A stretch of 64,000 nucleotides of DNA, taken from the IMG/VR virus record IMGVR_UViG_3300027844_001828, positions 1 through 64,000 of that record; one strand, given 5' to 3'. A program made the translations under genes and the position numbers. Each line of letters begins with the position of its first letter. Position 1 is the first letter of the stretch. The notes below the pieces were generated by a model. It searched no databases and was not told the DNA's origin. It saw only the letters and a program-made list of their open reading frames with translations. Below, in pieces: positions 39,736-54,700 of this stretch.

Positions 39736-41352
39736 ATGAGTAACATTAAAGACATAGAACCGATAAGGGAGTTGCTTGATTGTGCCAACGGGCAGTTTAA
39801 CTTATCGCAACCAAACTTCACACTTTGTTTGAATGCCATCGAGAAGGGTGGAGTTAAGGCTATGGTATCCGTTGCTCTTTTTAACAGAATAACGAGCAAT
39901 GTTTATTTGTTAAAAACCGAAGGGAGACAAAAGAAGGGAAGTGTCTGGTCAAACCCAATCCCTGTTGAAGAGATCATAATGGATTGCACCTCCAGGAAAG
40001 TTCTTGGAGAAAAAGGAATCGCTGCTTTGAAGCCGAACTATAGCCGCTACATTGCCGAGCTTATTGCAAATAACGTTTTCTACAGATTCGGTAAAAACAA
40101 CTTCCATGTATACACTTATGAGAAAGAAGTTTTCTCGTGGGGGTATATGAATAAAAAGTTAGCCTTCGTGTATCCTAAGACGGTTAAGAAATTGATCGCA
40201 TCAAAAACTGATTTGTGGAACTTGTTTTCTCATAACCACAAACCCGGCGTAAACTCATCAATGATGATCGGAGAGTTCTCTGAAAGGTTCGCGATGTTCA
40301 TTGACGAACTTGTTCAGAAGATGCCACCCAAAACGAAGAGCAGATTTAGAAAGTACACGAAGCATTATGACGCTTCGATTTATTTGTATGAGGTCGAGGC
40401 CATGTTAGCCAAAACGGATGATTTCGACGGGTTTGACGAGTATAACTCATTTGACGAGTCCATGCTTCCGTTATCGGTAGAGGGAAAGTTCTCAGAGCTT
40501 ATTCCGGGGGAAGTGAAAAGTAATTCAAGCAATGCGTTTGGTCACCAGAGAAGAATATCCGAGAAGAGCCTCTTCTTTATTAATGAGTCACTCTTAGCAA
40601 AGATCGTCGCAGTTAATGGGCTCCCCGAAGAGCAACTTCATGTTTCAAGTGATGCGTATCATCTTTTGAGTTATTTGGAGAGAAAGATAAAGGAGAAGCG
40701 CGGTATCACAGATCCGTCACTCGTTATATTTAAGAGTCTTTCCAAAGAGCAGAATCAATGTGCCGAGTTGTTCGACCGGTTGACCGCGACCGACAATCGA
40801 GATGACGACTTCATAAAAGAGTGGATAAAATGGTTTGTCATAAACCAAACTTTGGACAAGGACTTCGATAGTTCGTATGTCATTTGTCGCGCATTACTTA
40901 GGACATATAATAAGTTTTCTAAGAGTTATTTAATTGAAATGGGTGACGATAAAGTTGTCAGCGTCCTTTACAATTCGATGAAAGACAAGTATAGTATTGA
41001 CTGTACAATTGAGGAACTCTGCGGTCAGTTTGGAGTCTGGTTGTCTTATAATTTTTTGCACGTTTCATACGGTGAGAAAGAGGCTATCGATCTTATGCTT
41101 GGCATGTTCGAGGAAATATCTAACGAAGAGGGTCAGAAGAAGCGCACAAGGATTGAAACACTCTTGAAGGCGACTTGTTCTAGACCTTGGGAGCCGGGCT
41201 TGGTAACAAGACTTCACCCCATTACTAAAGCAATGGATAAGATGGTGTCGGGAAATAATTGTAGGTTGGCGGATCTCGGTTTGTCACCAGACAGAACAAC
41301 TGACGCGCAGCATTCAGCATTTTGGAGGAAAATAAATGACGAACGAAAGTAA
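39736..41352 (+). CDS. Hypothetical protein (538 aa), possibly a replication initiator
   Basis: Long ORF with SD, located between the SF2 helicase and the loader/DnaB genes. No motif recognised, so function is inferred from context only. Confidence 0.5.
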   Translation: MSNIKDIEPIRELLDCANGQFNLSQPNFTLCLNAIEKGGVKAMVSVALFNRITSNVYLLKTEGRQKKGSVWSNPIPVEEIIMDCTSRKVLGEKGIAALKPNYSRYIAELIANNVFYRFGKNNFHVYTYEKEVFSWGYMNKKLAFVYPKTVKKLIASKTDLWNLFSHNHKPGVNSSMMIGEFSERFAMFIDELVQKMPPKTKSRFRKYTKHYDASIYLYEVEAMLAKTDDFDGFDEYNSFDESMLPLSVEGKFSELIPGEVKSNSSNAFGHQRRISEKSLFFINESLLAKIVAVNGLPEEQLHVSSDAYHLLSYLERKIKEKRGITDPSLVIFKSLSKEQNQCAELFDRLTATDNRDDDFIKEWIKWFVINQTLDKDFDSSYVICRALLRTYNKFSKSYLIEMGDDKVVSVLYNSMKDKYSIDCTIEELCGQFGVWLSYNFLHVSYGEKEAIDLMLGMFEEISNEEGQKKRTRIETLLKATCSRPWEPGLVTRLHPITKAMDKMVSGNNCRLADLGLSPDRTTDAQHSAFWRKINDERK

Positions 41353-42358
41353 CAAAAATCTTGATGATGCAATAAAGTATCTTCAAGAGATTGAGCGTGG
41401 TACTGGCATAGATTTGCAAAAGTACGCGCACAAAAAAAGTTGGTTTGATAAGAAATTCTCAAACAAGCTTAAAGGGGTTAAAAACCCAGATGAATTGTCG
41501 GAATTCTTAAGTAAGGGAGTTGGTAGTTATTCAAATTCAGAGTTGACAGTTTTTGTTGACGGCCCAGTCCCAGGCAGCAGGCTTCTTGATGGATTGGATT
41601 ATAGAGAGGAAATATCTCGACATATTATGGTTGCCACTTTGCTACCGACGCTTTTCCACATAGATAGTTTCTCAGCTTCAGAGATGGTTCATCGAGAAGA
41701 GTTTAGTTCAGTGGTTCCTAAGCTCGTAGATTTTAAGAAGTCCGCAGAAGCGATTGAAAGGATGATCTCCGCCAAGATATTGTTTCTTGGAAACGTATCT
41801 TGCAATTCGGTTTTCGCCGTTTCAAACAGAGGCGGAAATCAAGAGCACTCCAATAAAACCACACAGTGGATATCAAGTGTTTTCGAAAGAGTCTTTTCAA
41901 CGAGGATGCTACAAGGGAAAATCACGATTGTGAGCCTTCTTGACCCGTATGAGACGATCATGGAAGAAGGGTCATGGCTCGGCCCTACGCTTCTTGAGAA
42001 GGTAAAAATATGCCACTCTTACCCAAACAGGGTTGATAACGCTATCTACTCAGAGATAAAAGGATTCAGAATTAGTTTGTCCACTAAGATCGAGGGAAGT
42101 GCTTTTGATTGTGAGTCGGTGAAGAAAAGAGTTATAAAAGCCGCTAATAAAGCGAGGTTGGGGATTGAAGACAAAGAGATAGATAGTGCGTTTATGAATT
42201 TTCATCAAAAGTGTGTGGATCTTAAAGTTCCAGACACAATTTATGAGAAGGTTGAAGCGTGGTTTGGATACGCAGTGGAGAACGACAAAGACGGAATGAA
42301 GAAGTTGATTTCCCAAATGAAAGAAGACCCGTCATTTATTACAATTTTTGCGAGGTAG
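41336..42358 (+). CDS. DnaC/IstB-like helicase loader with degenerate P-loop
   Basis: 'ISSVFERVFSTRMLQGKITIVS' matches the DnaC-type 'LFxIIxxRYxxxKPTIITSN' segment. 'VFVDGPVPGSR' lies at the Walker A position. Directly upstream of dnaB. Confidence 0.45.
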   Translation: MTNESNKNLDDAIKYLQEIERGTGIDLQKYAHKKSWFDKKFSNKLKGVKNPDELSEFLSKGVGSYSNSELTVFVDGPVPGSRLLDGLDYREEISRHIMVATLLPTLFHIDSFSASEMVHREEFSSVVPKLVDFKKSAEAIERMISAKILFLGNVSCNSVFAVSNRGGNQEHSNKTTQWISSVFERVFSTRMLQGKITIVSLLDPYETIMEEGSWLGPTLLEKVKICHSYPNRVDNAIYSEIKGFRISLSTKIEGSAFDCESVKKRVIKAANKARLGIEDKEIDSAFMNFHQKCVDLKVPDTIYEKVEAWFGYAVENDKDGMKKLISQMKEDPSFITIFAR

Positions 42359-42361
42359 AGA

Positions 42362-44011
42362 ATGTCATTTAGAGAAATAGATATAGCTAAAATAAAGCAG
42401 CGTGAAAGATTGTTGCCAAATGAAGATGTGATGATTGAGGCTCAGAGAGAAGAAGTTCAATTGCTATCTATCGTCATGAGAAAAGGCGGTGATCAATACC
42501 TTCAGGATATGATGGATTGCACAGAAGTTGGAGTTGAGCATTTCTTGTTCGCTCCTAATGCAAGGATGTTCTCACTTGTTTGTAAGTGTTACATGAAGAA
42601 TAGATCGAGGCCAACAAGGATCTACATTGAAAAACAAGCCGAGTACTTCGACTCGCCTGCACAGGTTCGATCATTTTATGAAAAGATTGTTCGGTTAAAT
42701 GTAGAAGAAGATAATTATGAGCAGTTGAAAAGAGGGTTGGTCGCAAGATTCCTACAGCAGTCATTTTTTGAAATAACTATGGGCAAGACTCCAGATGAAG
42801 TCGGACTCATGCAAAGAATATTTGACGCCAAAGATGATCAAGATAAGTTGATTGACAAGATGAGGGACCAACTCTTAGGTCTTGAGGCTCCAAATGATTC
42901 CGAAGATAAATTCACAAAGACGGTTTTGGTTAAAGAGGAAATAGATGAGGTCTATGATGAAATCATGGATCGAAGAATGAATCCAGAGGCCCATCAAGGA
43001 ATGATGTGTGGAATCCCAGGATTTGACAACACCTTGAATGGTTGGAAGCCGGGGGAGTACTCGATTTTGGTTGGGCACCCTAACGGCGGTAAAACAACGA
43101 CCATGATAAACTTGGCTGTGGGAATGGCTGAACGAGGCGCGAGGGTGTGCTATGTTACGGTAGAGTCATCAAGTCAGCAGTTGATCGAGAGATTGATCTC
43201 AAGAGAGTCTAAGATTGATTCGGCGATTATCAAGAAGGGTGGACAGGGAGAAGATGAGATAAACCAAGAAAGAGCTAACAAGATATACCATGCAAAGGAA
43301 AAGATCAAAGAGATGCTTGGCGATACCTTGTGCTTTATCACTGTTCCTCAGAAGACTAAGATCACATCAATGCTTGCCCGTGTAGAAAAACAGCGTAGGT
43401 TTTCTGACTTCGATGTTCTATTTGTTGATTATCTTGATGTTATTGATTCCGTAGAGAGATATCCAGACAGAAAGGACTTGGAGATCGGTGACGTAAGTGT
43501 TAGACTTCAGTCTTATGGAAGAAGACATGGGTTGACCACCTTTACTGCACAGAGTTTCAATAATGAAATGATAAAGGCCATTAAGAAGTGCCAAGAGAAT
43601 GCGTCCGATGATGAAGAGTCTGATCTTGAAAACGTTGTTGGAATCGAAGGTGTTGGAGGAACTCAGAAGTTATCGAGAGACGCAGATTATATGTGGGGGA
43701 TAATACTGGGAAATCAAGGGTTGAAGCTCTCCATATTTTGGCTTAAATCAAGGAACACTGGAAAAGAAAGACCATTTATCTTAAACGCCTTTTTAGACTG
43801 TTGCCTCCTTGTTCAAAGAGAGAGCTTCCAGGCTGATGGAAACGGAACAGGTCCGATTCTTCCAAATGTAAGCGAAGAAGAAGTCGCTAAGGGTATTGAA
43901 GCAATAAGCTCGGACGAGGACGGGCCAGAAGAAATTAACAAGGGGAAAGACGGTTCGATTGCCGATGAGGTAAGCACAGGCAGTGGTTTCGCTATGAACC
44001 CAGAGGTATAG
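42362..44011 (+). CDS. dnaB: Replicative DNA helicase DnaB
   Basis: Walker A 'GHPNGGKTT', 'VCYVTVESS', Walker B 'FVDYLDVI', 'AQSFN', 'QKLSRDADY', 'LKSRN'. Confidence 0.9.
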   Translation: MSFREIDIAKIKQRERLLPNEDVMIEAQREEVQLLSIVMRKGGDQYLQDMMDCTEVGVEHFLFAPNARMFSLVCKCYMKNRSRPTRIYIEKQAEYFDSPAQVRSFYEKIVRLNVEEDNYEQLKRGLVARFLQQSFFEITMGKTPDEVGLMQRIFDAKDDQDKLIDKMRDQLLGLEAPNDSEDKFTKTVLVKEEIDEVYDEIMDRRMNPEAHQGMMCGIPGFDNTLNGWKPGEYSILVGHPNGGKTTTMINLAVGMAERGARVCYVTVESSSQQLIERLISRESKIDSAIIKKGGQGEDEINQERANKIYHAKEKIKEMLGDTLCFITVPQKTKITSMLARVEKQRRFSDFDVLFVDYLDVIDSVERYPDRKDLEIGDVSVRLQSYGRRHGLTTFTAQSFNNEMIKAIKKCQENASDDEESDLENVVGIEGVGGTQKLSRDADYMWGIILGNQGLKLSIFWLKSRNTGKERPFILNAFLDCCLLVQRESFQADGNGTGPILPNVSEEEVAKGIEAISSDEDGPEEINKGKDGSIADEVSTGSGFAMNPEV

Positions 44012-44013
44012 TT

Positions 44014-44556
44014 ATGGCTGGTGGATTCAGAGGATTAGTTTATAATCAGGTGGATCTTAAGGACTTCTTGGAAACGACATGCGGTGTCCGATTGAGAAAG
44101 ACCGGGGACGACAGTTATAAAACTCTTTGCCCGTTCCCGTATCATAGGGACGGGAAGCCGTCATTTCAGGTAGATCTTAAGGAAGGTGGCTGGATGTGGT
44201 ATTGCTATGGCTGCTCTGAAGGCGGGACGATATTTGAATTCGTCCAAAAGTATTTCAGTCTCGATGCCGAGAATGCCGTCAAGTATATCACTGATAATTT
44301 TGAAATAAGAAGTGACGTTGAGGCTATCGTCTCGTCTATGGCTTTATCGGGATCTGACTCTAAGCGTAGGGTGGAGACTGAGACTCATCATGTTGTTTTG
44401 TGCAACGTCTGTTATGATTTATTAAAAAATAGATCTGGGGATAAAGAAGTTTTTTTAAAGGTCAAGAATATATTTTCCAGAGCGAATGAGGCGTTGTCCA
44501 CAATGGACGCTAATGAAATGTATGAAATCATGTCTGACGCATTGTCTATAGATTAA
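44014..44556 (+). CDS. Stand-alone DnaG-type CHC2 zinc-binding domain protein (no TOPRIM domain)
   Basis: 'CPFPYHRDGKPSFQV...WYCYGCSEGGTIFEFVQKY' is the CHC2 zinc finger; the ORF stops at 180 aa. Confidence 0.85.
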   Translation: MAGGFRGLVYNQVDLKDFLETTCGVRLRKTGDDSYKTLCPFPYHRDGKPSFQVDLKEGGWMWYCYGCSEGGTIFEFVQKYFSLDAENAVKYITDNFEIRSDVEAIVSSMALSGSDSKRRVETETHHVVLCNVCYDLLKNRSGDKEVFLKVKNIFSRANEALSTMDANEMYEIMSDALSID

Positions 44557-44558
44557 CG

Positions 44559-44567
44559 TGGTATAAT
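44559..44567 (+). promoter_or_regulatory. Extended -10 promoter (TGgTATAAT), probably giving a near-leaderless dCMP deaminase mRNA
   Basis: TG-n-TATAAT lies 8 nt upstream of ATG 44576, with no SD in the gap. Confidence 0.5.
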
Positions 44568-44575
44568 TTAGAATT

Positions 44576-45133
44576 ATGAGAAATGATTATAATAGTTGGC
44601 ACGAATGCTTTTTTGGATTCGCATATGAGGCGGCGGGACGATCAAAAGATCCGTCTACTCAATGCGGAGCTTGTATTGTTAGAAATAACAGGCCGAAGGG
44701 GATTGGATATAATGGCTTTATAAAAGGAGTCGAAGACACCCCGGAACGATGGGAAAAAGAAGAAAAGAAAAAGTACGTCTACCACGCTGAAAAGAATGCG
44801 ATAGCTAATAGTGAACTTAGAGACTTTGAAGATTGTCATTTGTATTTATGGTCTTCAAACCCGAATGTTTACCTTCCGTGCAAGGCATGCGCTGGAGATA
44901 TCGTACAGTTTGGAATAAGAAACGTACACGTATTGAAAAGACACAACGCAATTGAACCTGAAGATGACAAAAGATGGGACACTGGATTGACCTTATCTCT
45001 ATTTGAACATGGAGACGTAAGAGTTCATTCTCATTCCGCCGAAGAAGTACACCGTGCTTTGCTCACAAGAGCAACGAAAGATCTAAGCATGGAGAACATA
45101 GGTAATGAGTCAGGAACAGATAACAAGTGTTAA
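44576..45133 (+). CDS. dCMP deaminase (ComEB/T4 Cd-like)
   Basis: 'AAGRSKDPSTQCGACIV', 'GIGYNGF', 'HAEKNAI', 'PCKAC'. Confidence 0.92.
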   Translation: MRNDYNSWHECFFGFAYEAAGRSKDPSTQCGACIVRNNRPKGIGYNGFIKGVEDTPERWEKEEKKKYVYHAEKNAIANSELRDFEDCHLYLWSSNPNVYLPCKACAGDIVQFGIRNVHVLKRHNAIEPEDDKRWDTGLTLSLFEHGDVRVHSHSAEEVHRALLTRATKDLSMENIGNESGTDNKC

Positions 45134-46196
45134 TGCGATAGCACCAACGAGAATTTGCGATATTGGCGGGTGGACTGATACCTGGTTCGCAGGACACGGG
45201 TCAATTTTTAATATTGCAGTATATCCGTATGTGGATGTCCAGGTTTCCATATTGAGGGACGAAGAGAGCGCTGGGAAAATTTTTCTTTCTATGGAAAATT
45301 ACGACGATAAGTACCAGTTTGACTCAAGCAAAAAAATTGATGGCCCACTTGGGTCAAAGTTATTTTTACGAGAGGGTAAGGGGGGAGAATTCGGAAAATA
45401 CCCACTCGTAGAGAAGGCTGTTGAGATAATGGATACCCCTATGGATGTAGGGTATAGTATCAGCGTGTATTCTGACGCGCCACCTGGAGCGTCCATCGGA
45501 ACCTCCGCCGCCGTTTCTGTCGCCTTAATCGCGAGCCTTGACAGGCTATCTGACGGCCATTTAACCGCTCATGAAATAGCTCAGATGGCGCATTCAATAG
45601 AAACCAAGTACTTAAATTTGGAATGTGGCGTTCAGGATCAGTTGGCAAGTGCCTATGGTGGTATTAATTTCATTGATGTAAATAGATACCCATACTCAGT
45701 CGTCTCACCAGTTCCTATTAGCGATCAGATTTGGTGGGAATTAGAACAGAGACTGGCATTAGTTTATATTGGAATTCCACATGAATCGAGTGCGATCCAT
45801 AAGATTGTTATTGAAAGCCTTGGGAAAACCCCCTCACTTGACAATCGAATAGAGAAATTAAGGGTTCTTGCGAGAAGAGCTAAAAACGCTTTGATCGATG
45901 GTAATTTCGTCGAATTTGGCGATATTATGAATGAAAGCACAGCTGTTCAAAAAAGTATGCATCCAGAATTGGTGTGCTCTCAGTTTAGAGAGATCATCGA
46001 TATAGTTAAACATTATAAAGCCCTTGGATGTAAAGTAAATGGGGCTGGCGGGGATGGCGGGTCTTTAAGTATCTTGTTTGGAGAATGTAGAGAGGATAAA
46101 AGGAAGTGCCTGAAAGTTCTTGAAGAAAAGGGGTTTAACATTCTCCCCATATATCTCGCAAGAAGGGGGCTTAGGGTTTGGGAATCAAGAGGGTAG
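45105..46196 (+). CDS. hddA: GHMP sugar kinase, D-glycero-alpha-D-manno-heptose-7-phosphate kinase (HddA)-like
   Basis: 'APTRICDIGGWTD', 'PPGASIGTSAA', 'GVQDQLASAYGGINFI' and 'GCKVNGAGGDGG' match the HddA/fucokinase subgroup of GHMP kinases. Confidence 0.75.
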   Translation: MSQEQITSVNAIAPTRICDIGGWTDTWFAGHGSIFNIAVYPYVDVQVSILRDEESAGKIFLSMENYDDKYQFDSSKKIDGPLGSKLFLREGKGGEFGKYPLVEKAVEIMDTPMDVGYSISVYSDAPPGASIGTSAAVSVALIASLDRLSDGHLTAHEIAQMAHSIETKYLNLECGVQDQLASAYGGINFIDVNRYPYSVVSPVPISDQIWWELEQRLALVYIGIPHESSAIHKIVIESLGKTPSLDNRIEKLRVLARRAKNALIDGNFVEFGDIMNESTAVQKSMHPELVCSQFREIIDIVKHYKALGCKVNGAGGDGGSLSILFGECREDKRKCLKVLEEKGFNILPIYLARRGLRVWESRG

Positions 46197-46199
46197 GAC

Positions 46200-47090
46200 A
46201 TGAAATACATTCCGTCTGATGAGAATTTGGTAAAGTTTACAGACTTTGTCAATGAGGGGGGTTTCTATTTGAGAAACACGAGAGTTTGGAAAGGTAGATC
46301 TTCTTGTGTTATAAAACTCCCTGGTGTAGATGCCGATATAGAATTTAAGCCTCAAAGAGACTTCACTATTCATGATAGACTCATGATGACTCATATGAGA
46401 ATACATCGTTGGATGTATAGAACATTCACGGTCAAAACAGAATATGGATATTTCGTCCCCAATTGCAACCTTGATGAGTTTTCTTTGGTTAACGAAAGGT
46501 TCACAGAAAGATTCTACAATATTGTTGAGGAATCATCCACTATAAGACTTGATGAAATAAAAGCAAGCGTTGAAGGATCGTTTCATGAGATGATTAGATG
46601 GATATGGGCGAACAATCTTGGAAATGATGGAGACCCACCAGAGTCATTTGTAAATGAATATATCAAAAAACGAATAAAAAGCATAGAAACTCCAGAGTCG
46701 TTCAAAAACCAGTTTGAGTATTCGGTAACAAAAGTAAACCCGGAAAAATCCCCGGAGATTAGTGAAAAAGTAGCGAGAGAGGTGTATTCCAGGTGTATAA
46801 ACAAGAGGATGGCTTTCTATTTGTACTTGAGCAAGTCAAAAGAAAAGATCAGGGCCACAGGGAATGGGCCTTTAAAAAATCTTGTGAGATACACCCTACA
46901 TTGGAAAAAGGTACCATTCTATGGTGATGACGAGCTATTATTTTTTATAGATGAGATAAGACATTTGGTCATGAGAAACTTGGAAAGAGATCATGAAGAA
47001 ATATGCGCCAAGATAGATGTTTTAATGAACTATATAAAGACGTGTACAAAATACCCAATATACCTTGGAGACAAAAAGTATGGAGAATAG
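46200..47090 (+). CDS. Hypothetical protein (296 aa), weak resemblance to DUF3150-type phage proteins
   Basis: Intact ORF with SD. 'RIHRWMYRTFTVKTEYGYFVPNCNLDEF' recalls the DUF3150 pattern, but the match is tentative. Confidence 0.5.
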   Translation: MKYIPSDENLVKFTDFVNEGGFYLRNTRVWKGRSSCVIKLPGVDADIEFKPQRDFTIHDRLMMTHMRIHRWMYRTFTVKTEYGYFVPNCNLDEFSLVNERFTERFYNIVEESSTIRLDEIKASVEGSFHEMIRWIWANNLGNDGDPPESFVNEYIKKRIKSIETPESFKNQFEYSVTKVNPEKSPEISEKVAREVYSRCINKRMAFYLYLSKSKEKIRATGNGPLKNLVRYTLHWKKVPFYGDDELLFFIDEIRHLVMRNLERDHEEICAKIDVLMNYIKTCTKYPIYLGDKKYGE

Positions 47091-47343
47091 ATTCGAAGGA
47101 ATAGAAGTGATAGATGATGGCCCGGATGTTTATTCCAGGAGTAAGGACGGTAGAATCATGTTTAGATTTAATAGAATAGACGGGACGTTTGCCCTGTTCA
47201 GATCTACAAGAATCAGCGATGCAGAAAAAGAGTTCACGTTGATAATGTTTGATAAGTTGAGCAATGATATGACCGAGACGAGTAGAGAAGATGTAAAATG
47301 TGCATTAGAGTATAAACTTGAAAAGGACCTATTTTGCACATGA
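47080..47343 (+). CDS. Hypothetical protein
   Basis: GGAG SD upstream of ATG 47080; its stop overlaps the next ATG (ATGA). Confidence 0.55.
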   Translation: MENRFEGIEVIDDGPDVYSRSKDGRIMFRFNRIDGTFALFRSTRISDAEKEFTLIMFDKLSNDMTETSREDVKCALEYKLEKDLFCT

Positions 47344-49535
47344 GTAATGCAGAGCATAAAAACATATTACCATTTAGCATTTTCAAAACCATCCTCATTG
47401 TAGAGAAGAGGGCTCTTGATGAAGGGATATCATTAGTGGACTCTTGTTTTTTCGCAAGCTGTATGATGAGTGCGAACAAGATGCATTTCCACCCCACCTT
47501 TGACGATAAAGAGATGGGCAAGTTCTGCGCCTTCATAGATGAAAACTGTCTTGTTAGATCGAAAAAGAAGACTTTTAATATAGATGACATCAAGTTCGCG
47601 AAACCAGTAATCGACTGTGTTGTGAAAGCGAAGGTCGAACCCAACAATGTTGATGCATGTCACGTCTTTTATCTTTTGATGAAATCAGATAGGAAGTTGA
47701 ATTCAATCGCTGCGCAACACAATATAACCACGAATAAGATTCTTGAGGTTGTAAATAGGATTGGCTCAAGTAAAATTGAGAATGATAAAAAGGTTACGGG
47801 TAAAAACAAGAAGCCCGCCAAGAGTGTCGCAAGTGGAAAAGAAGATTTGATTTTCAAATACTGCATAGATTTTAATGAGAAAGCAGCCAAGGGCGAATTG
47901 TCACCAGTGTTTTGTAGGGATGATGAAATTGAGAAGGTGATCGTCTCCTTGATGAAAAAGAACAAAGCTAATCCATTGTTGATTGGTGAGCCGGGAGTCG
48001 GTAAGACAGCCATTGTTGAGGGTATAGCGCAAAAGTTCGCTGCCGGGGATGTGCCTAAGAGATTCAAAGGGTATAAGATTCTTGGATTAAGTATGTCATC
48101 GATCATTCAAGGGACAACCTTGAGAGGGCAGTTTGAAGAACGCCTCGAAGCCATAATGAAAAAGATAATCGAAACTGGCAATATCATTTTGTTCATTGAT
48201 GAGATCCACACAATGGTGGGTGCGGGAAACGACTCTAATGGATTGGATGCGGGAAATATTATGAAGCCGTATCTTGCCAGAGGTGAATTTAGATGCATCG
48301 GAGCGACAACGTTTGACGATTATTATAAGTACATGAAAAAAGACAAGGCTCTTTCGAGAAGGTTCCAGAGAATTTTTGTTTCAGAACCCAGTAAAGAAGA
48401 GACGATTGAAATAATTAGGGGGTTAGCACCAGGTCTTGAGACCTATCACGGTTGCGTCATTGACTCATCGTCTTTTGAAAAATCTGTTGATTTATGCCAA
48501 AGATTTATCAATGACAGGTTTTTTCCAGACAAGGCTATAGATTGTCTTGATCACGCTTGTGCAAAGTCATCATTAGACTTGAGTGTTGTCGGAGACGATA
48601 TTATTGAGGAAGTTATTAGCGACTTCTGTGACATCCCCGTCTCTTTAATCAGAACGAAAGAGTCTGTGAGGCTTGAGAAGCTTGAGGGCGCTATTGGGAG
48701 TGAGATATTTGGAAATGAAAATAGTATCAAAGAATTTTGCAATAGAATAAGATTCGCTTGCTCAACGAGGAAGTCTTCGAGTGGGCCGTTATGTTCTTTT
48801 GTGTTTTATGGCCCTCCGGGGATTGGTAAAAAATCTATTATCGGGATAACAGCGAGGCATCTGTATGGTGATCAATCCGTAATAGTAATAAATGGATCGG
48901 AATACTCAGAGAGCAATGCGATAAATAGAATAATTGGCTCTCCGCCTGGATATATCGGTTACGATGAGGAAGGGTATATTTTAAGAGAGGTGAGACGCAA
49001 GCCCCATACGATGATTTTAATTAAGAAGCAAGATCTAATGCATGCTACAGTGAAAGAGCAGTTTAAGCAGATAATAGAGCGTGGTGTGGTAACTGATGTT
49101 CATGGGATGATAGCGGACTTCTCAAATTGCGTTATCGCCTTCTCGGTGGACACCAGCAACAAAAGTAGTTTGGGATTTACTCAGGGAGGGAACAGCGTCA
49201 GTGGCGATGCGGAATGCGAGACAATAAAAAAGAATTGCCCATTATTATCCCGCGTGTCTCACCACATATCTTTCAACGACACACCATCCGAGTACGTGTC
49301 GAGTCTCGTATCAGTCGAAATGGAAAAATTCCATGACGAGTTGAAATTCAGCGAAATCCGTGTACATTATGATTCTAAGTGTATCAAGTATTTCGAATCC
49401 TTGAAGGGCTCTCCTTCATCTATTCGATCCGAAGTAAGAAACAAGCTCGAATACGAATTATGTAATGGGCTATCCTCAGACAATCGAGAGTACTGGTTTG
49501 AAGTAGTCGATGATGAAATAACAGTTAGGAGGTAA
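47340..49535 (+). CDS. clpA: ClpA/ClpC-family AAA+ chaperone; NBD1 intact, NBD2 degenerate
   Basis: NBD1 has 'GEPGVGKT', 'FIDEIH', 'CIGATT' and 'ALSRRFQ'. NBD2 has 'GPPGIGKK', pore loop 'GSPPGYIGY', Walker B replaced by 'LIKKQD', and an 'LGF' loop. There is no middle coiled-coil domain. Confidence 0.85.
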   Translation: MSNAEHKNILPFSIFKTILIVEKRALDEGISLVDSCFFASCMMSANKMHFHPTFDDKEMGKFCAFIDENCLVRSKKKTFNIDDIKFAKPVIDCVVKAKVEPNNVDACHVFYLLMKSDRKLNSIAAQHNITTNKILEVVNRIGSSKIENDKKVTGKNKKPAKSVASGKEDLIFKYCIDFNEKAAKGELSPVFCRDDEIEKVIVSLMKKNKANPLLIGEPGVGKTAIVEGIAQKFAAGDVPKRFKGYKILGLSMSSIIQGTTLRGQFEERLEAIMKKIIETGNIILFIDEIHTMVGAGNDSNGLDAGNIMKPYLARGEFRCIGATTFDDYYKYMKKDKALSRRFQRIFVSEPSKEETIEIIRGLAPGLETYHGCVIDSSSFEKSVDLCQRFINDRFFPDKAIDCLDHACAKSSLDLSVVGDDIIEEVISDFCDIPVSLIRTKESVRLEKLEGAIGSEIFGNENSIKEFCNRIRFACSTRKSSSGPLCSFVFYGPPGIGKKSIIGITARHLYGDQSVIVINGSEYSESNAINRIIGSPPGYIGYDEEGYILREVRRKPHTMILIKKQDLMHATVKEQFKQIIERGVVTDVHGMIADFSNCVIAFSVDTSNKSSLGFTQGGNSVSGDAECETIKKNCPLLSRVSHHISFNDTPSEYVSSLVSVEMEKFHDELKFSEIRVHYDSKCIKYFESLKGSPSSIRSEVRNKLEYELCNGLSSDNREYWFEVVDDEITVRR

Positions 49536-49537
49536 TC

Positions 49538-50029
49538 TTGAACGCTAACAAGTTCACGCTCGGTAAGATCATCTTGGATTGTGACACAACAGTTCACGCT
49601 TTGTTAAGGGATGACCAGAGGGGTGTATTCACGCCGATGTATTTGGATTACGAATGCTCAAGGTCCCTTGTTGAATTAAATGAAAATAATTACGCCCGCG
49701 AAATGAAAATGACTGTAGACTTTTTGATCCAGTCATGGCGGAGTATGGGTTTTTCAATCGAGAGTCTTTTTCTTGACAATCCAAACGGGGGAGCAGACGA
49801 CGTTCCAGTTCCAGTTATCGTATTGGCCCAGAATAATGGTGATCAGGTGATGATGAAGATTTCCTCGTTTGCACCCATCAATGTCGCTTTAACAATTGTT
49901 CAGTTAACTGGAATAAATATTTATATTACTGATAGAATAGAGAAAAATCTTCATATTTTAGATATTTCAGTGTATGATAAGTATATACAAGAAACATCTT
50001 TGACAGATGAAATAGAAGAGGAAGACTAA
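49538..50029 (+). CDS. DUF151 / bifunctional-nuclease-like protein (diverged)
   Basis: AGGAGG SD with TTG start. 'PMYLDYECSRSL...MTVDFL...MGFSIESLFL...APINVALTIVQLTGINIYI' follows the DUF151 layout. Confidence 0.55.
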   Translation: MNANKFTLGKIILDCDTTVHALLRDDQRGVFTPMYLDYECSRSLVELNENNYAREMKMTVDFLIQSWRSMGFSIESLFLDNPNGGADDVPVPVIVLAQNNGDQVMMKISSFAPINVALTIVQLTGINIYITDRIEKNLHILDISVYDKYIQETSLTDEIEEED

Positions 50030-50313
50030 TGGATAGGACGATTGTCAATGAAGGAGAATACATAGAGGTCGAATGTGAAAATATTTCCGGTGATATCGAG
50101 AAACTTGAGGAAGCGGAAATAATTGTTCTTACAAATATGAGAATAGAATTGGCTGACAAAGACAAGTCAGATTTTCTAAGAGTTTTTAAGAAGTGGTATG
50201 AATTTTTTATAGAGACTTCACCATACTTTAACCAGCTTGATGAGACCCAACGTTCAGACGCCACAATAAGGAAGATGTTGACCCATGTGCCTAATTTCAA
50301 TAAAGCTGACTAA
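50029..50313 (+). CDS. Hypothetical protein
   Basis: GAGGA SD; start overlaps the previous stop; 94 aa. Confidence 0.55.
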   Translation: MDRTIVNEGEYIEVECENISGDIEKLEEAEIIVLTNMRIELADKDKSDFLRVFKKWYEFFIETSPYFNQLDETQRSDATIRKMLTHVPNFNKAD

Positions 50314-50530
50314 GAAGGCCTCGGAAGGCCCGGAGCCGCAATTCTTTTATAGTCTCAAAGAGAGATTCAAAGACTTTTTTAGTAAATGTGACGTTGTATC
50401 ATACGAGAAGGTTAATGATAGGTTCTTATTGAGAGTTTATGTGCATTGGCCGGAGAACGCGGTTTCAATATTTATCAATGGTGCCTTATTGCGGGTAAGA
50501 GGCGTTGAAAAAGCATCAATTATATCATAG
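50285..50530 (+). CDS. Possible small hypothetical protein
   Basis: Fills an otherwise empty ~220 nt gap in a co-oriented operon; start uncertain. Confidence 0.35.
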   Translation: MCLISIKLTKKASEGPEPQFFYSLKERFKDFFSKCDVVSYEKVNDRFLLRVYVHWPENAVSIFINGALLRVRGVEKASIIS

Positions 50531-50540
50531 GAGTATGGAA

Positions 50541-51224
50541 ATGGAAGATCAAATAACGGTTGAAGAACTTGAGAAGCAACTGTCAGAAATTGACAAAAAA
50601 GCGATGAGTATAGAAATTTTCCAATGGCTAATTGACAACGCCGAACATTACATTGACACAATGACCGAAGATTTCTCGTTAAGCTTTTTAGCTAATGATG
50701 AGATTATGCCAGAGACTGTGAAAGTTGAAAAGCTATGCAATGATCTTGAGACTATGGAGATCGAAGTGACCGGGGCGGAAGATCAGTTGGAAGACGTTAT
50801 CAATGATAACCCAGATATTGAGGAAGCGGCAAGAAAGCAGACAGCATTGAACGAGTTTATGGAAGAGGTTAGGGTTTTTATGGATGAAGACCTGGAGTAT
50901 AAAGGGAAAATCCTTGACAAGTTCATGTATTTCCACGACTTTGTTGGATATCGACCAGTTGAAAAAGAAGACGGTACAATAAAAGCCGAAGAGATTATAA
51001 AAGATATGACCGGCTCAGTAGAAATATCATATCTGTCTTTTGAGAACATGAGCATGGACGTATCAAGAATAGCCCACGACCCAGTTTATGACGATGATGG
51101 TAATATTGTCAGTTATGAAAAAGATGAGGCTAAGAGAGAGATCGTCGGAAAGATTCCGCCGTCATTTTGTATAGACATGTCAGTTAGCGTATGGGAGAAC
51201 CATGGATCAGCCTCAATATTCTAA
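50541..51224 (+). CDS. Acidic hypothetical protein with N-terminal coiled coil
   Basis: GGAG SD 7 nt before ATG 50541; very D/E-rich. Confidence 0.6.
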   Translation: MEDQITVEELEKQLSEIDKKAMSIEIFQWLIDNAEHYIDTMTEDFSLSFLANDEIMPETVKVEKLCNDLETMEIEVTGAEDQLEDVINDNPDIEEAARKQTALNEFMEEVRVFMDEDLEYKGKILDKFMYFHDFVGYRPVEKEDGTIKAEEIIKDMTGSVEISYLSFENMSMDVSRIAHDPVYDDDGNIVSYEKDEAKREIVGKIPPSFCIDMSVSVWENHGSASIF

Positions 51225-51648
51225 AATAATAATTCCTGTCCCAGTTAGTGTATCCATTGTGGTGATCAGTGACGCACGTGTGTTGGTAAAAAAACATGAC
51301 ATTGGATTTCACTTCCCATTTGATTATTTTACACACTCTGAAAGTGCTACCACACAAGATTGCGCCGCAAAATTATTATCAGAGATTACCGATGTTGTAC
51401 ATGACGGAGAAAATTGGCTTCCAGTTGATATTAGAAGTTTCGGGGTGCGGAAAAATATCGACAATAATCATAGCTTAGACATTGGCTACATGACAATGTT
51501 AAATACGCTTGACATCCCACTTGTAGATGAAGATGAGTATGAGTGGAAGATAGTAGATTTTGATAAAAAGACGTTCCCGGTTGATCTCTTAACCGATCAC
51601 GAGTCGTTATGGCAAGCCGCTTGGAATATGTTTGATATAATGAAATAG
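51202..51648 (+). CDS. Nudix-fold protein with degenerate Nudix box
   Basis: 'VSIVVISDARVLVKK...FHFPFDYFTHSESATTQDCAAKLLSEITDV...W...DHE' follows the Nudix layout, but the G and the catalytic RExxEE are missing. Confidence 0.55.
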   Translation: MDQPQYSKIIIPVPVSVSIVVISDARVLVKKHDIGFHFPFDYFTHSESATTQDCAAKLLSEITDVVHDGENWLPVDIRSFGVRKNIDNNHSLDIGYMTMLNTLDIPLVDEDEYEWKIVDFDKKTFPVDLLTDHESLWQAAWNMFDIMK

Positions 51649-51705: not shown

Positions 51706-52782
51706 GTGAAGAAAATTCTATTTATTGACGGTATGAATTTGGCCTGGAAGGCTATCCATGCTTATAATCTCTCGACCTCAAGCGGACAAGATACGTCCGC
51801 TATTTTTGGTTTTATAAACCAGCTTATATCAGTAATAAACGGTAGAAAAGACTTGTTGATTGTTGTAGCGTGGGACGGTGGTTATGAAGAGAGGACCAGG
51901 CTCTCAAACGCGGGTATTGAAAAGGGCATTATCAATGCTGCGTATAAGTCTAATCGAAAATCAGACGATAAGACTCAAGACACCAAGATCAACTTAGACC
52001 CTCAGCTTAAAGAGATCCAACGCGCACTTAGCCACACTGACATAAAACAAATATTTGTAGCTGGCGAAGAGGCCGATGATGTTATCGCTTCATGCGCCAA
52101 AAAGATCGGTGGCAAGGCGGAGATACTCTGCTTAACCTGCGACCATGATTATTATCAATTATTGAGTGACAATTTTTCAATTTTGGATAGGATGCATGGC
52201 ACAGAGAATTTAATCACGAACAAAACATTCACCGAAGACAAGGGTATAGAGCCTTGTCAGTGGGTTGATTCTGGAGCGTTAAGCGGAGACACGAGTGATT
52301 GCATTATGGGGGTTCCCGGATGTGGAGAACCAACTGCTATAAAGCTCATCAAAGCACATGGAGATGTTGAGAGTGTCATTAGTCATTTTGAATCTGAATT
52401 GTCTATAGAAAGGGGTAAGTATCCAGATTTACAAACTCAGGATGAAGTAAATGAGTTGATCTCTCTTGGTGGGACTAAGAAAGTAAAGGGAAATAGTCAA
52501 AAGCCAAATTATGAGGGTATTTATGTTGGGATGCCCTTCAGCGGAGTTTGCTTGGCGAACTTGAGGGGTGACTTGAAAAAGGTAAAGAAGATTGATATAA
52601 AGGTCGTCATGTACCAAGAGAGAATCCGTCTTGCAAAGCAGTTGAAAAAGATGAGGTCAGATATAGACGTTCCAAACATAACGTTTGAATCGTCTTTTAA
52701 TGAAAGAGAGTTTTGCAGAATTTGTGGGGAATATGAGTTGTATTCTATAACCATGAAAGCTGAGGTTTTTAAGTTCTTATGA
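51706..52782 (+). CDS. 5'-3' exonuclease / flap endonuclease (PolA N-terminal / T5 D15-like)
   Basis: 'FIDGMNLAWKA', 'YKSNR', 'EADDVIAS', 'DHDYYQL', H3TH 'ALSGDTSDCIMGVPGCGEPTA'; GTG start with GGAG SD. Confidence 0.92.
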   Translation: MKKILFIDGMNLAWKAIHAYNLSTSSGQDTSAIFGFINQLISVINGRKDLLIVVAWDGGYEERTRLSNAGIEKGIINAAYKSNRKSDDKTQDTKINLDPQLKEIQRALSHTDIKQIFVAGEEADDVIASCAKKIGGKAEILCLTCDHDYYQLLSDNFSILDRMHGTENLITNKTFTEDKGIEPCQWVDSGALSGDTSDCIMGVPGCGEPTAIKLIKAHGDVESVISHFESELSIERGKYPDLQTQDEVNELISLGGTKKVKGNSQKPNYEGIYVGMPFSGVCLANLRGDLKKVKKIDIKVVMYQERIRLAKQLKKMRSDIDVPNITFESSFNEREFCRICGEYELYSITMKAEVFKFL

Positions 52783-53044: not shown

Positions 53045-54700
53045 ATGAAATTAGTAATATTAGAGTCTCCGAATAAGATATCCACCATTAAAAAGTATCT
53101 ACCTGATGACTTTGAGGTCTTGGCCTCAGTTGGTCATATCATGGAGATACCGGCAGATTCGATGAATATCAACATAGCAGATGGGACATTCGCTCCCGTT
53201 ATCAGACCGATACCAGGAAAAGAAGATACAATAAAGTTGATTCAGTTTAAGGCCAAGCAAGCCGATGAAGTGTTTATCTGTACTGACCCTGACCGTGAGG
53301 GAGAAAGAATAGCTCTAGATATCTATGAAATATTGGAAGATAAAAGCAAAGTTAAGCGAGCGGCTTTCCACGAGATCACAAAGAAAGCCGTGGCGAAGGC
53401 CATTAATGAGGCTGGAGATATTGATTTTAATAGAGCATACAGTCAAATGGCTCGTCAAATTATAGATCGAGTATTGGGGTACACAGTAAGTCCAATGGTA
53501 TGGAAGAGCATCGTTGGTGGAAAAAGCGCCGGGAGAGTCCAGTCTGTCGCCCTTGGGTTGATCGCAGAAAGAGAGGCGGAGATTGATTCTTTTGTAAGAG
53601 ACTTATTCTGGGATATCACTGTGGGTATGAAGATTGGAGGGGAAAATGTTTTCGGAGTTGTTTCAACAAACAATAAGGGGAATAGAATATACAAACAGGC
53701 CGACGCCGAGAGAGCAAAGGAGATCATTGAGAAAAGTGAGCTTAAGGTTTCAAACGTTAGCAAAAGTATCAAGGCAAGAAAGGCCCAGGCACCATTTGAC
53801 ACTGCTTCATTGCAGAAGTTGGCCTCTACAAATTTTGGGTGGTCAGGAAAAAAGACGATGGATGTTGCTCAGAAATTGTATGAAAAGGGAATGTGTACAT
53901 ATCATAGGACCGACAGTTTCAGCGTATCAACGGAGGCTCAAGAAGTCTGTTCAGGATATATAAAGACCGAACATGGAGACGATTACGTCCCAAAGACTCC
54001 AAATGTTTATAAGAAGAAAGGGCAAACATCTCAGGAGGCCCATGAGTGTATAAGGCCAACATCTGTAAGGGGAGACTCGTGGATTAATGAACCCTTAGAG
54101 AAAGATGAGCAGAGGCTTATAGATATGATCACGAACAGGTTTGTTGCCTCGCAAATGTCTGACTTGAGGGTAAAAAGCACCGTTATCACTATTCCATGCA
54201 AGCCGTGTAAGATTATTGTAGAGGGGAAGTCGATTGAGTTTGATGGCTGGTCAAAGGTTTGGCAAATAAGCGGAAAGGAAGTATTCCTTCCGAATATCGA
54301 AGAGAATGACACCCTCGATCTCAATGGAGTGGTTATTAAGGATCATGAGACCCGTCCACCGGAAAGGTACAACACGGGTACTTTAGTGTCAAAGATGGAG
54401 AAGCACGGGGTTGGAAGGCCCTCAACATGGGCGCAGATAATTGAAAACATCGTTGGGCGAGGATATGTTGAAAATGACGGGAAGAGGTTCGCTCTCACCA
54501 GTATAGGGAAGGATGTTTATACTTTCTTGGTGAATAAATTTAGAGAATCTTTCATGGACTTGGGATACACTTCTACAGTAGAAGCCGAGTTAGACAAAAT
54601 ATGTAAAGACCCGTCAATTAGAGTGGAAGTGATTTCTAACTTTTACGATAATATTAACAGGGCAATCAAAAAAAGTCGGCGCGTATCCCTTGGAATATAG
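53045..54700 (+). CDS. topA: DNA topoisomerase IA (core, no C-terminal zinc ribbons)
   Basis: 'LVILESPNK', 'SVGHI', 'TDPDREGE', 'SAGRVQS', active-site 'TYHRTDS', 'HECIRPT', 'GVGRPSTW'. Confidence 0.95.
   Translation: MKLVILESPNKISTIKKYLPDDFEVLASVGHIMEIPADSMNINIADGTFAPVIRPIPGKEDTIKLIQFKAKQADEVFICTDPDREGERIALDIYEILEDKSKVKRAAFHEITKKAVAKAINEAGDIDFNRAYSQMARQIIDRVLGYTVSPMVWKSIVGGKSAGRVQSVALGLIAEREAEIDSFVRDLFWDITVGMKIGGENVFGVVSTNNKGNRIYKQADAERAKEIIEKSELKVSNVSKSIKARKAQAPFDTASLQKLASTNFGWSGKKTMDVAQKLYEKGMCTYHRTDSFSVSTEAQEVCSGYIKTEHGDDYVPKTPNVYKKKGQTSQEAHECIRPTSVRGDSWINEPLEKDEQRLIDMITNRFVASQMSDLRVKSTVITIPCKPCKIIVEGKSIEFDGWSKVWQISGKEVFLPNIEENDTLDLNGVVIKDHETRPPERYNTGTLVSKMEKHGVGRPSTWAQIIENIVGRGYVENDGKRFALTSIGKDVYTFLVNKFRESFMDLGYTSTVEAELDKICKDPSIRVEVISNFYDNINRAIKKSRRVSLGI

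What the first reader, a model, noticed from the sequence alone, without database searches (positions are those of the whole stretch)
41336..51648. Pattern: a cluster of host-like pseudo-enzymes
Seen: within about 10 kb, four host-derived folds lack key catalytic residues (DnaC-like Walker motifs, ClpA NBD2, DUF151 motif, Nudix box). Neighbouring enzymes (DnaB, dCMP deaminase, NBD1, exonuclease, TopA) keep perfect motifs and all ORFs are full length, so this is not general decay. Inference: a host-takeover toolkit based on mimicry and decoy binding rather than catalysis.
Basis: inference. Interest (0 to 1): 0.6.

Follow-up and report, generated by a model that had tools for sequence, protein, structure and literature searches.

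The report
Degenerate enzyme folds in jumbo phage
In the replication gene block of an uncultured marine jumbo phage, four proteins keep the shape of known enzymes (a DnaC-type helicase loader, the second ATPase ring of a ClpA/C unfoldase, a DUF151 "nuclease" and a Nudix hydrolase) but lack the usual catalytic residues; distant relatives keep them too, so they are most likely working non-catalytic parts of the phage's own machinery, not a kit of host decoys.

Summary
The observation largely holds. All four fold assignments were supported.
- P0001 (41336-42358) is a DnaC/IstB/DnaA-clade AAA+ fold with no Walker A or B.
- P0002 (47334-49535) is ClpA/C-like. NBD1 is intact. NBD2 is degenerate at Walker A, Walker B, sensor 1 and sensor 2.
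- P0003 (49538-50029) has the DUF151/BFN fold. The family's His is lost, but its invariant Asp is kept in the window copy.
- P0004 (51202-51648) has a Nudix fold with a dead Nudix box.

DnaB, dCMP deaminase, NBD1, the 5'-3' exonuclease and TopA keep their motifs.

The same gene order, including all four proteins, recurs in very distant relatives. The ClpA-like and Nudix-like proteins are as conserved (44% and 41%) as the true enzymes (41-51%). This is old, maintained loss, not decay.

The "host mimicry/decoy toolkit" reading has no positive support. The DnaC-like gene always sits beside the phage's own DnaB. The Clp ATPase keeps an active ring, pore loops and a ClpP-docking (L/I)GF loop, and the phage encodes its own ClpP. 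The DUF151 catalytic motif is only putative.

Each case has a well-known precedent, so the four are best read as independent non-catalytic subunits. I could not show that the clustering exceeds chance. Interest is moderate.

The parts
39736..41352 (+). 538-aa ORF (P0023) of unknown fold that always precedes the DnaC-like gene
   Evidence: It has no family hit. ORFs of 533-554 aa hold the same position in relatives.
41336..42358 (+). P0001: DnaC/IstB/DnaA-clade AAA+ fold without Walker A or B. It is a candidate ATP-independent partner or loader of the phage DnaB.
42362..44011 (+). DnaB-family replicative helicase with Walker A (GHPNGGKT) and Walker B (VLFVDYLD) intact
   Evidence: It is 42% identical to the L127 orthologue.
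44014..44556 (+). DnaG CHC2 zinc-ribbon-only protein. The catalytic DNAG_N+Toprim part is encoded 30 kb away at G000 75050-75673.
44576..45133 (+). dCMP/cytidine deaminase with HAE and PCxxC intact
45105..46196 (+). GHMP-family sugar or small-molecule kinase. It is present here but absent from the syntenic relatives.
47334..49535 (+). P0002: ClpA/ClpC-like two-ring AAA+ unfoldase (the gene caller starts it at 47340). NBD1 is canonical and NBD2's ATPase site is degenerate. The NBD2 pore loop (GYIG) is kept, as is a ClpP-docking-type LGF loop at residues 613-615 (nt 49170-49178).
   Evidence: Pfam, PHROG 4871 and TIGR02639 hits and alignments A1 and A5. The NBD2 Walker A is at nt 48810-48833 (GPPGIGKK). 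The Walker B positions are at nt 49023-49028 (KK in place of DE). Identity to the L127 orthologue is 60% in D1 and 39% in D2.
49538..50029 (+). P0003: DUF151/BFN-fold protein starting 3 nt after the Clp ATPase stop. The family His is lost; the Asp is kept here but not in the relative.
   Evidence: Identity to the L127 counterpart is 17% (z 6.9).
50029..51224 (+). Three conserved small or medium ORFs of unknown function (94 aa, 81 aa and 227-239 aa) between the BFN-like and Nudix-like genes
   Evidence: Orthologues in L127 are 32-37% identical.
51202..51648 (+). P0004: Nudix-fold protein with a degenerate Nudix box (residues 40-65, nt 51319-51396)
   Evidence: It is 41% identical to the L127 orthologue, whose box has no Glu at all.
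51706..52782 (+). 5'-3' exonuclease/FEN with its acidic clusters present
53045..54700 (+). Type IA topoisomerase (TopA) with Toprim acidic residues and the catalytic Tyr motif present

Best explanation
The interval is the conserved replication, nucleotide and proteostasis gene block of a marine jumbo-phage clade. It holds four old, maintained, non-catalytic derivatives of enzyme folds. Each most likely serves the phage's own machinery, and they are not one decoy kit.

(a) P0001 is a DnaC/IstB-type AAA+ protein that lost nucleotide hydrolysis long ago. It acts as an ATP-independent loader or partner of the adjacent phage DnaB. This is inferred.

(b) P0002 is a ClpA/C-type unfoldase in which ring 1 is the only motor. 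Ring 2 survives as a structural ring that still carries the substrate pore loop and the (L/I)GF loop for docking on ClpP, probably the phage's own ClpP. The motif states are shown; the activity is inferred.

(c) P0003 is a fast-evolving DUF151-fold protein, probably translationally coupled to the Clp gene. It is most simply a binding or adaptor protein. This is inferred, and weakly.

(d) P0004 is a Nudix-fold ligand- or nucleic-acid-binding protein that no longer hydrolyses. The degenerate box is shown; the role is inferred.
For: Fold assignments. Motif states.

Conservation:
- The block order 538-aa ORF, DnaC-like, DnaB, DnaG Zn ribbon, deaminase, about 300-aa ORF, Clp ATPase, about 160-aa ORF, small ORFs, about 150-aa ORF, 5'-3' exonuclease, TopA recurs on three distant contigs. 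The DnaC-like/DnaB pair also recurs on four short contigs.
- Identity of window versus L127: true enzymes 41-51%, Clp ATPase 44%, Nudix-like 41%, DnaC-like 21.5% (z 16.6), BFN-like 17% (z 6.9).
- The L127 orthologues share the GKK Walker A, a lost Walker B Glu, sensor 1 Asp, sensor 2 GSP and a dead Nudix box.
- The ratio of D2 to D1 identity is about 0.9 in canonical Clp pairs. It is 0.54-0.65 for this clade. That means relaxation of the ATPase site but not of the domain.
- Six population contigs carry 5 SNP sites in 20 kb, of which 4 are synonymous.

Own partners:
- The phage ClpP has Ser, His and Asp in place. It lies in an auxiliary module, not a head module.
- An LGF or IGF loop sits at the ClpA IGL position in both clade members.
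- DnaB plus P0001 fold-together: weak support. The score was 0.39 (runs 0.39, 0.46, 0.39) against a best control of 0.00. That mark was reached by 58 of 80 solved complexes and 2 of 110 mismatches, but at 0.60 or under by only 7 of those 80 solved complexes and by both mismatches that passed. The runs agree in at least 61% of contacts, and partner pLDDT is at least 77.

Precedent from established knowledge: inactive AAA+ subunits occur in loaders (clamp-loader delta-prime, ORC subunits); NSF D2 is a non-hydrolysing ring; NrtR and the MutY C-terminal domain are non-catalytic Nudix folds; and several phage helicase loaders (lambda P, T4 gp59) are not ATPases.
Against: - No activity or binding was measured.
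- The DnaB-P0001 prediction is only weak support. It may reflect memory of DnaBC structures.
- ClpP P0020 scores below NCBIfam cut-offs for both true ClpP and ClpP-like head protease. No other prohead protease family was found, so it could be the head maturation protease rather than a partner of P0002.
- Residue-level alignments for P0003 and P0004 rest on MAFFT at under 20% identity.
- The P0003 AF2 model is low confidence (pLDDT 55).
- Only one distant relative with DNA (L127) could be inspected for three of the four proteins.
- Catalytic residues may have migrated, as is known for some 'pseudoenzymes' (PMC10211241).
Confidence: 0.6

Rival explanations
1. One reading: the four proteins are a coordinated host-takeover kit. 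They mimic host DnaC, ClpA, a nuclease and a Nudix enzyme, and they titrate or block host partners without catalysis.
For: All four folds lack canonical catalytic residues yet are conserved. They lie in one co-directional block that is probably early or middle. Jumbo phages are thought to deploy Clp components against the host (PMC7824862, read). A dead NBD2 with a ClpP-docking loop could in principle cap host ClpP.
Against: No host partner is identified. P0001 is fixed next to the phage's own DnaB, and the fold-together test with that DnaB gave weak support. P0002 keeps a canonical NBD1 and pore loops, and the phage has its own ClpP. Three of the four show no sequence similarity to any cellular protein, which is not expected of mimics that must fit host interfaces. 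The four are interleaved with ordinary replication enzymes rather than forming a unit.
Confidence: 0.12
2. Cryptic enzymes: some of the four are still catalytic, using non-canonical or migrated residues. Candidates are the conserved D-Y-R-E motif of P0001 at the P-loop position, the GKK site of NBD2 binding nucleotide, and the conserved FPFD, SLDIGY and DH..LW residues of P0004.
For: New conserved motifs replace the lost ones. Migrated catalytic residues are documented in other 'pseudoenzymes' (PMC10211241). The DUF151 mechanism is unknown, so loss of its His need not abolish activity (PMC7249048).
Against: NBD2 lacks Walker B acidic residues, the sensor 1 Asn and the sensor 2 Arg together, and in L127 it also lacks the Arg finger. 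The one Glu left in the window's Nudix box is not conserved in L127. None of the 14 P0001-family proteins has a Lys-Thr/Ser P-loop.
Confidence: 0.1
3. No pattern: the four are unrelated coincidences in a genome where most proteins are very divergent. 'Loss of motif' is partly an artefact of aligning at under 20% identity.
For: P0003 and P0004 cannot be aligned by HMM or hhalign to their families. The DUF151 motif is only putative. Choosing four out of about 16 genes was post hoc. No null model could be computed.
Against: The NBD2 and P0001 losses are unambiguous at residue level and are shared across the clade. The Nudix-box helix is located consistently by MAFFT and by the pairwise orthologue alignment.
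Confidence: 0.18

Closest known systems
DnaC / DnaI / IstB helicase-loader AAA+ proteins (initiator clade, with DnaA)
   Different: There is no Walker A GK[ST] and no Walker B acidic pair in any of the 14 family members. It has an extra C-terminal helical bundle of about 80 residues. It has no Pfam, PHROG or NCBIfam sequence match.
Inactive AAA+ subunits of replication loaders (clamp-loader delta-prime, some ORC subunits). From established knowledge, not tested here.
   Same: An AAA+ fold retained as a structural subunit of a replication loading machine without nucleotide hydrolysis.
   Different: These work inside hetero-oligomers with active paralogues. No active DnaC-like paralogue was looked for or found in this phage.
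ClpA / ClpC (Hsp100 class I unfoldases), and the ClpA-like protein of RaK2-type Klebsiella jumbo phages
   Same: Two AAA+ rings and no ClpB-type middle domain. NBD1 is 46-48% identical to ClpC, ClpB and RaK2. It has a GYxG pore loop and a [LIV]-G-[FL] loop at the ClpP-docking position.
   Different: The NBD2 ATPase site is degenerate (GKK, KK or DN, sensor 1 Asp, sensor 2 Arg lost), whereas RaK2 and the bacterial proteins are canonical. It scores far below the TIGR02639 ClpA cut-off (481 versus 993 bits). The N domain is highly diverged.
Type II AAA+ proteins with one non-hydrolysing ring (NSF D2, Pex1/6 D1) and the Hsp100-like SMAX1/D53 family. From established knowledge; only a weak PF23569 precomputed hit here.
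   Same: One ring keeps the fold and oligomer role but not hydrolysis. A weak NBD_SMAX1 hit is on record for this protein.
   Different: A different clade and different cellular roles. In ClpA the second ring is normally the main motor, so its loss here is the unusual direction.
DUF151/BFN domain (TM0160, Rv1829/Cor, plant BBD/UVR2-4)
   Same: The fold matches (Atlas TM 0.70-0.72; AF2 model versus 1vjl/1sj5 at E about 4e-6). It is a small stand-alone protein. Plant DUF151-UVR proteins are trapped by a Walker-B ClpC1 mutant (PMC8889267), and here the gene directly follows a ClpC-like gene.
   Different: It does not reach the Pfam model at all. The RP.THD and RPSD motifs are degenerate and there is no UVR domain. 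It is very poorly conserved within the clade (17%).
Non-catalytic Nudix folds (NrtR effector domain, MutY C-terminal domain)
   Same: A Nudix fold with a degenerate box. The best Atlas structural row (TM 0.79) is an NrtR-type cluster.
   Different: There is no winged-helix or glycosylase partner domain. The ligand is unknown. There is no detectable sequence relation.

Membership tests
DnaC/IstB/DnaA initiator-clade AAA+ | AAA+ alpha-beta core with the initiator-specific two-helix insertion between strands 2 and 3 | tested here: met
DnaC/IstB/DnaA initiator-clade AAA+ | Walker A GxxxxGK[ST] and Walker B hhhhD[DE] | tested here: not met
   Both are absent in P0001 and in all 13 relatives.
DnaC/IstB/DnaA initiator-clade AAA+ | Sequence match to PF01695 / PF00308 | tested here: not met
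   No hit even at E of 1-10 for any of the 14 members.
DnaC-type helicase loader (function) | Binds the cognate DnaB helicase | tested here: inconclusive
   Adjacency to DnaB is conserved. The fold-together test gave weak support only: 0.39 against a best control of 0.00.
ClpA/ClpC class I Hsp100 | Two AAA+ modules (AAA plus AAA_lid_9, then AAA_2), with a canonical NBD1 | tested here: met
ClpA/ClpC class I Hsp100 | Canonical NBD2 ATPase site (Walker A GKT, Walker B DE, sensor 1 Asn, Arg finger, sensor 2 GAR) | tested here: not met
   The window has GKK, KK, Asp, Arg kept, and GS-. L127 has GKK, DN, Asp, Phe, and GS-.
ClpA/ClpC class I Hsp100 | ClpP-docking [LIV]-G-[FL] loop in NBD2 | tested here: met
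   The window has LGF and L127 has IGF. These align with LGF of a Paenibacillus ClpC and IGV of RaK2. ClpB lacks the loop. Binding itself was not tested.
ClpA equivalog TIGR02639 | Score over the curated cut-off | tested here: not met
   480.9 bits against a cut-off of 993.
BFN_dom / DUF151 (PF02577) | Fold of TM0160 | tested here: met
   Atlas TM is 0.70-0.72. Foldseek gives only 1vjl/1sj5 as significant hits. The AF2 model itself is low confidence.
BFN_dom / DUF151 (PF02577) | Pfam model match and the conserved RP.THD / D.RPSDAI motifs | tested here: not met
   There is no Pfam hit. The motifs read TVD and NNGD, so the His is lost and the Asp is kept. Neither is kept in L127.
Nudix hydrolase (PF00293) | Nudix alpha/beta/alpha fold | tested here: met
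   The Atlas model has TM 0.68-0.79 to nine Nudix clusters, and the feature score is 0.96. There is no independent model of my own.
Nudix hydrolase (PF00293) | Nudix box Gx5Ex7REUxEExGU | tested here: not met
   In the window the REUxEExGU part reads KLLSEITDV. In L127 it reads KILRKCTGI. There is no Pfam hit in the genome.

The most novel reading that the evidence does not exclude
The Clp part is a new kind of phage-encoded protease system. It would be a ClpA/C-type unfoldase that has permanently switched off its normally dominant second ring and runs on ring 1 alone, keeping ring 2 as pore and ClpP-docking platform. It would work with the phage's own ClpP and with the translationally coupled DUF151-fold protein as its adaptor or regulator, echoing the unexplained DUF151-ClpC1 association in chloroplasts.

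In parallel, the Nudix-fold protein would be an NrtR-like ADP-ribose/NAD-metabolite binder in a phage that carries its own NAD salvage genes.
Probability: 0.2. Interest if true: 0.65.

Novelty: new variant of a known kind. Interest (0 to 1): 0.4.

Why it matters
If confirmed at the bench, the clade would offer three things.
- A natural ClpA/C unfoldase whose second ring is catalytically dead. That would be a ready-made test of how much work ring 1 can do alone.
- A family of nucleotide-free DnaC/IstB-fold proteins attached to a DnaB helicase. That bears on how helicase loaders can dispense with ATP.
- A possible first functional context, a Clp partner, for the long-unexplained DUF151 domain.

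It also shows that 'pseudo-enzymes' in phage genomes can be stable, ancient components and need not be decoys. As it stands, each element has a good precedent and nothing has been measured, so the finding is a moderate lead and not a surprise.

Tried and rejected
- Close relatives: megablast and tblastn against GenBank phages found nothing for the region or for P0001, P0003 or P0004. IMG/VR scans with P0002 and with a DnaB alignment gave no clade members. The scan with alignment A2 could not run. The JGI metagenome scan gave only the source contig and one 4.5-kb fragment.
- Word searches for P0001, P0003 and P0004 returned only near-identical copies.
Population contigs differ at only 5 sites in 20 kb, and the only distant relative with DNA is far past synonymous saturation. 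I used amino-acid identity relative to neighbouring true enzymes instead.
- A weak RecA C-terminal-domain hit for P0001 was rejected. The family profile does not reproduce it, and the model is AAA+, not RecA.
- HMM and hhalign alignment of P0004 to a small Nudix profile failed to place the box. Only MAFFT and the orthologue alignment place it.
- The Pfam Nudix and BFN models find nothing in the whole genome.
- PADLOC gave nothing specific.
- Searches for S77 and S78 prohead proteases were blank, so the role of the ClpP-like protein stays open.
- RNA-library contigs identical to parts of the Clp, ORF227 and Nudix-like genes exist. Contigs in an RNA library do not prove transcription.
- I did not compute a chance expectation for 'four in 10 kb', because no census of degenerate folds in phage genomes was at hand.

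Full report
**Context.** The window is the first 64 kb of a 235.6-kb IMG/VR jumbo-phage record. Near-identical DNA occurs in seawater and marine metagenomes from at least a dozen studies. Between 38 and 56 kb all genes lie on the + strand. In order they are:
- an SF2 helicase;
- a 538-aa ORF;
- P0001 (41336-42358);
- DnaB;
- a DnaG zinc-ribbon protein;
- dCMP deaminase;
- a GHMP kinase;
- two unknown ORFs;
- a ClpA/C-like ATPase, P0002 (47334-49535);
- P0003 (49538-50029);
- three unknown ORFs;
- P0004 (51202-51648);
- a 5'-3' exonuclease;
- an 87-aa ORF;
- TopA;
- a tail-tube-like protein.

**Fold assignments.** P0001, P0003 and P0004 give no hit in Pfam, PHROGs or NCBIfam, even at permissive thresholds.

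- P0003: the Atlas's own model (pLDDT 0.77) matches BFN_dom clusters at TM 0.70-0.72. My AF2 model is poor (pLDDT 55). Even so, its only significant PDB matches are the two TM0160/DUF151 entries (E about 4e-6, TM 0.54-0.67), and the next hit is at E 0.04.
- P0004: the Atlas model (pLDDT 0.75) matches nine different Nudix clusters at TM 0.68-0.79, with a feature score of 0.96.
- P0002 is unambiguous by sequence: AAA, AAA_lid_9, AAA_2, PHROG 4871, and ClpA/ClpB NCBIfam models.

**Motif states.**
- P0001 and its whole family lack a GK[ST] P-loop. The loop between strand 1 and helix 1 is longer and ends in a conserved G-x-[DN]-[YH]-R-[ED]. The Walker-B strand ends in x-[ND] in place of D-[DE].
- P0002 was aligned with the RaK2 phage ClpA-like protein, two bacterial ClpC proteins and Salmonella ClpB. 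NBD1 is canonical. In NBD2, Walker A is GPPGIGKK (Thr to Lys), Walker B DE is KK, the sensor-1 Asn is Asp, and the sensor-2 GAR has lost its Arg. The GYxG pore loop is kept, as is an LGF tripeptide at the position of the ClpA/ClpC ClpP-docking loop. ClpB lacks that loop. The RaK2 homologue is canonical throughout, so the degeneracy is specific to this clade.
- P0003 was aligned to three canonical BFN proteins taken from bacterial genomes. It reads TVD for THD and NNGD for RPSD. The His of the putative triad is lost, and the Asp reported as invariant in the family is kept. That triad is a proposal from the TM0160 crystal structure and is not an established mechanism (PMC7249048).
- P0004 was aligned by MAFFT to nine canonical Nudix domains. 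It places FD for GG, keeps the first Glu, and reads K-L-L-S-E-I-T-D-V for R-E-U-x-E-E-x-G-U.
- The neighbouring enzymes are intact. DnaB has GHPNGGKT and VLFVDYLD. The deaminase has HAE and PCxxC. TopA has its Toprim acidic residues and the TYHRTDS tyrosine. The exonuclease has its acidic clusters.

**Conservation.**
- Population contigs from other samples are almost clonal. There are five variable sites in 20 kb, four of them synonymous, including two in NBD2. That is too few for a test.
- The DnaC-like family gave access to deep relatives. Short contigs show [about 540-aa ORF]-[DnaC-like]-[DnaB].
- Three longer contigs show the whole block in the same order, including a 720-747-aa Clp ATPase, a 155-167-aa ORF after it, and a 147-155-aa ORF before the 5'-3' exonuclease. 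Only one of these, L127, came with DNA.
- Window versus L127 identities: DnaB 42%, DnaG Zn ribbon 41%, deaminase 44%, exonuclease 51%, Clp ATPase 44%, Nudix-like 41%, DnaC-like 21.5% (z 16.6 against shuffles), BFN-like 17% (z 6.9).
- The L127 Clp ATPase shares the GKK Walker A, has DN for DE, Asp at sensor 1, no Arg finger and no sensor-2 Arg. It carries IGF in the docking loop.
- The L127 Nudix-like protein has no Glu at all in the box. It shares strongly conserved residues elsewhere (FPFD, SLDIGY, DH..LW).
- Within the Clp ATPase, D1 is 60% identical and D2 is 39% identical between the two phages. The ratio of D2 to D1 identity is about 0.9 for canonical pairs but 0.54-0.65 for this clade. 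Ring 2 has therefore been released from ATPase constraint, but not from constraint as a domain.

**Partners.**
- The genome encodes one ClpP-family protein (G000 161512-161940) with Ser, His and Asp in the expected motifs. It lies among an NAD-dependent ligase, NAPRTase, an actin-like protein, NadE and an RNA ligase, not among head genes. However, its NCBIfam scores are below the cut-offs for both true ClpP and ClpP-like head protease, and no S77 or S78 prohead protease was found. Its role therefore stays open.
- Folding P0001 together with the phage DnaB gave weak support: score 0.39 (runs 0.39, 0.46, 0.39) against a best control of 0.00. The mark was reached by 58 of 80 solved complexes and 2 of 110 mismatches. 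At scores of 0.60 or under, it was reached by only 7 of those 80 solved complexes and by both mismatches that passed. The runs agree in at least 61% of contacts, and partner pLDDT is at least 77. Given the fold and the fixed adjacency the guess was likely beforehand, but the pass may also reflect memory of DnaBC structures.
- Plant DUF151-UVR proteins are strongly enriched on a Walker-B trap of chloroplast ClpC1 (PMC8889267). This is the only outside hint that a DUF151 fold next to a ClpC-like gene might be a Clp partner. P0003 lacks the UVR domain.

**Interpretation.** The proposed mechanism, a toolkit of host mimics and decoys, has no positive evidence. The simpler reading is four independent, long-established non-catalytic derivatives, each with a familiar precedent:
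- a nucleotide-free AAA+ subunit attached to the phage's own replicative helicase;
- a two-ring unfoldase with one silent ring that still carries the pore and the ClpP-docking loop;
- a DUF151-fold protein whose family function is itself unknown;
- a Nudix fold used for binding.

Jumbo phages are already known to carry ClpP, ClpA, ClpX and ClpS genes (PMC7824862). What is unusual here is that the silent ring is D2, which is normally the main motor of ClpA (established knowledge). I could not show that four such proteins in about 16 genes is more than chance. The selection was post hoc, one case is soft, and one is half of an active enzyme.

**Limits.** No biochemical data exist. The residue-level statements for P0003 and P0004 rest on low-identity alignments. 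For three of the four proteins only one distant orthologue could be read. The two other long syntenic contigs were listed without DNA. RNA-library contigs identical to parts of the Clp, ORF227 and Nudix-like genes exist, but they do not prove transcription.

Noticed in passing
window 44014-44556, and G000 75050-75673 (outside the window): The DnaG-type primase is split. A 180-aa CHC2 zinc-ribbon-only protein sits after DnaB, and DNAG_N plus Toprim_2 lie in a 247-aa frame 30 kb away. The Zn-ribbon-only gene is conserved (182-184 aa) in the relatives.
   Followed up: partly
window 45105-46196: A GHMP-family kinase lies between the dCMP deaminase and the 296-aa ORF. Its nearest NCBIfam model is heptose-7-phosphate kinase HddA, far below cut-off. 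It is present in this phage but absent from all three long syntenic relatives, so it looks like a lineage-specific insertion, possibly linked to nucleotide or sugar modification.
   Followed up: partly
G000 152000-171000 (locus L138): An auxiliary module holds an NAD-dependent DNA ligase, NAPRTase, a full-length Volactin-family actin homologue (PF25216, E 1.9e-74), a glutamine-dependent NAD synthetase, the ClpP-like protein and an RNA ligase. This gives the phage its own NAD salvage genes and an actin-like filament protein.
   Followed up: partly
window 39736-41352: A 538-aa ORF with no detectable family always precedes the DnaC-like gene, overlapping it by 17 nt here. Relatives have 533-554 aa ORFs in the same place. 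It is a candidate third member of the loader/initiator set.
   Followed up: no
TopA gene in relatives (contig of P0016; JGI 3300010883 contig): In one distant relative TopA carries an intein with a LAGLIDADG homing endonuclease (1084 aa). In one near-identical population contig TopA is called as two pieces (233 + 280 aa).
   Followed up: no
window 50594: One RNA-library contig (run X17) identical to 50533-50768 carries a single inserted A behind 50594, inside the 227-aa ORF. Depth is under 5, so it may be an assembly error.
   Followed up: no
window 42182-42334 (P0001 residues 283-333): There is a weak local similarity to the RecA C-terminal domain (single-copy E 0.04-0.19). The family profile does not reproduce it, so it is taken as chance.
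   Followed up: yes
window 55-60 kb (seen through loci L003/L128): Downstream of TopA, on the same strand, lie a tail-tube-like protein, a clamp-loader-like AAA+ (DNA_pol3_delta2), a sigma-70 region-2 protein, a beta-clamp and a RuvC-like protein. The tail-tube-like gene is thus embedded in the replication block.
   Followed up: no
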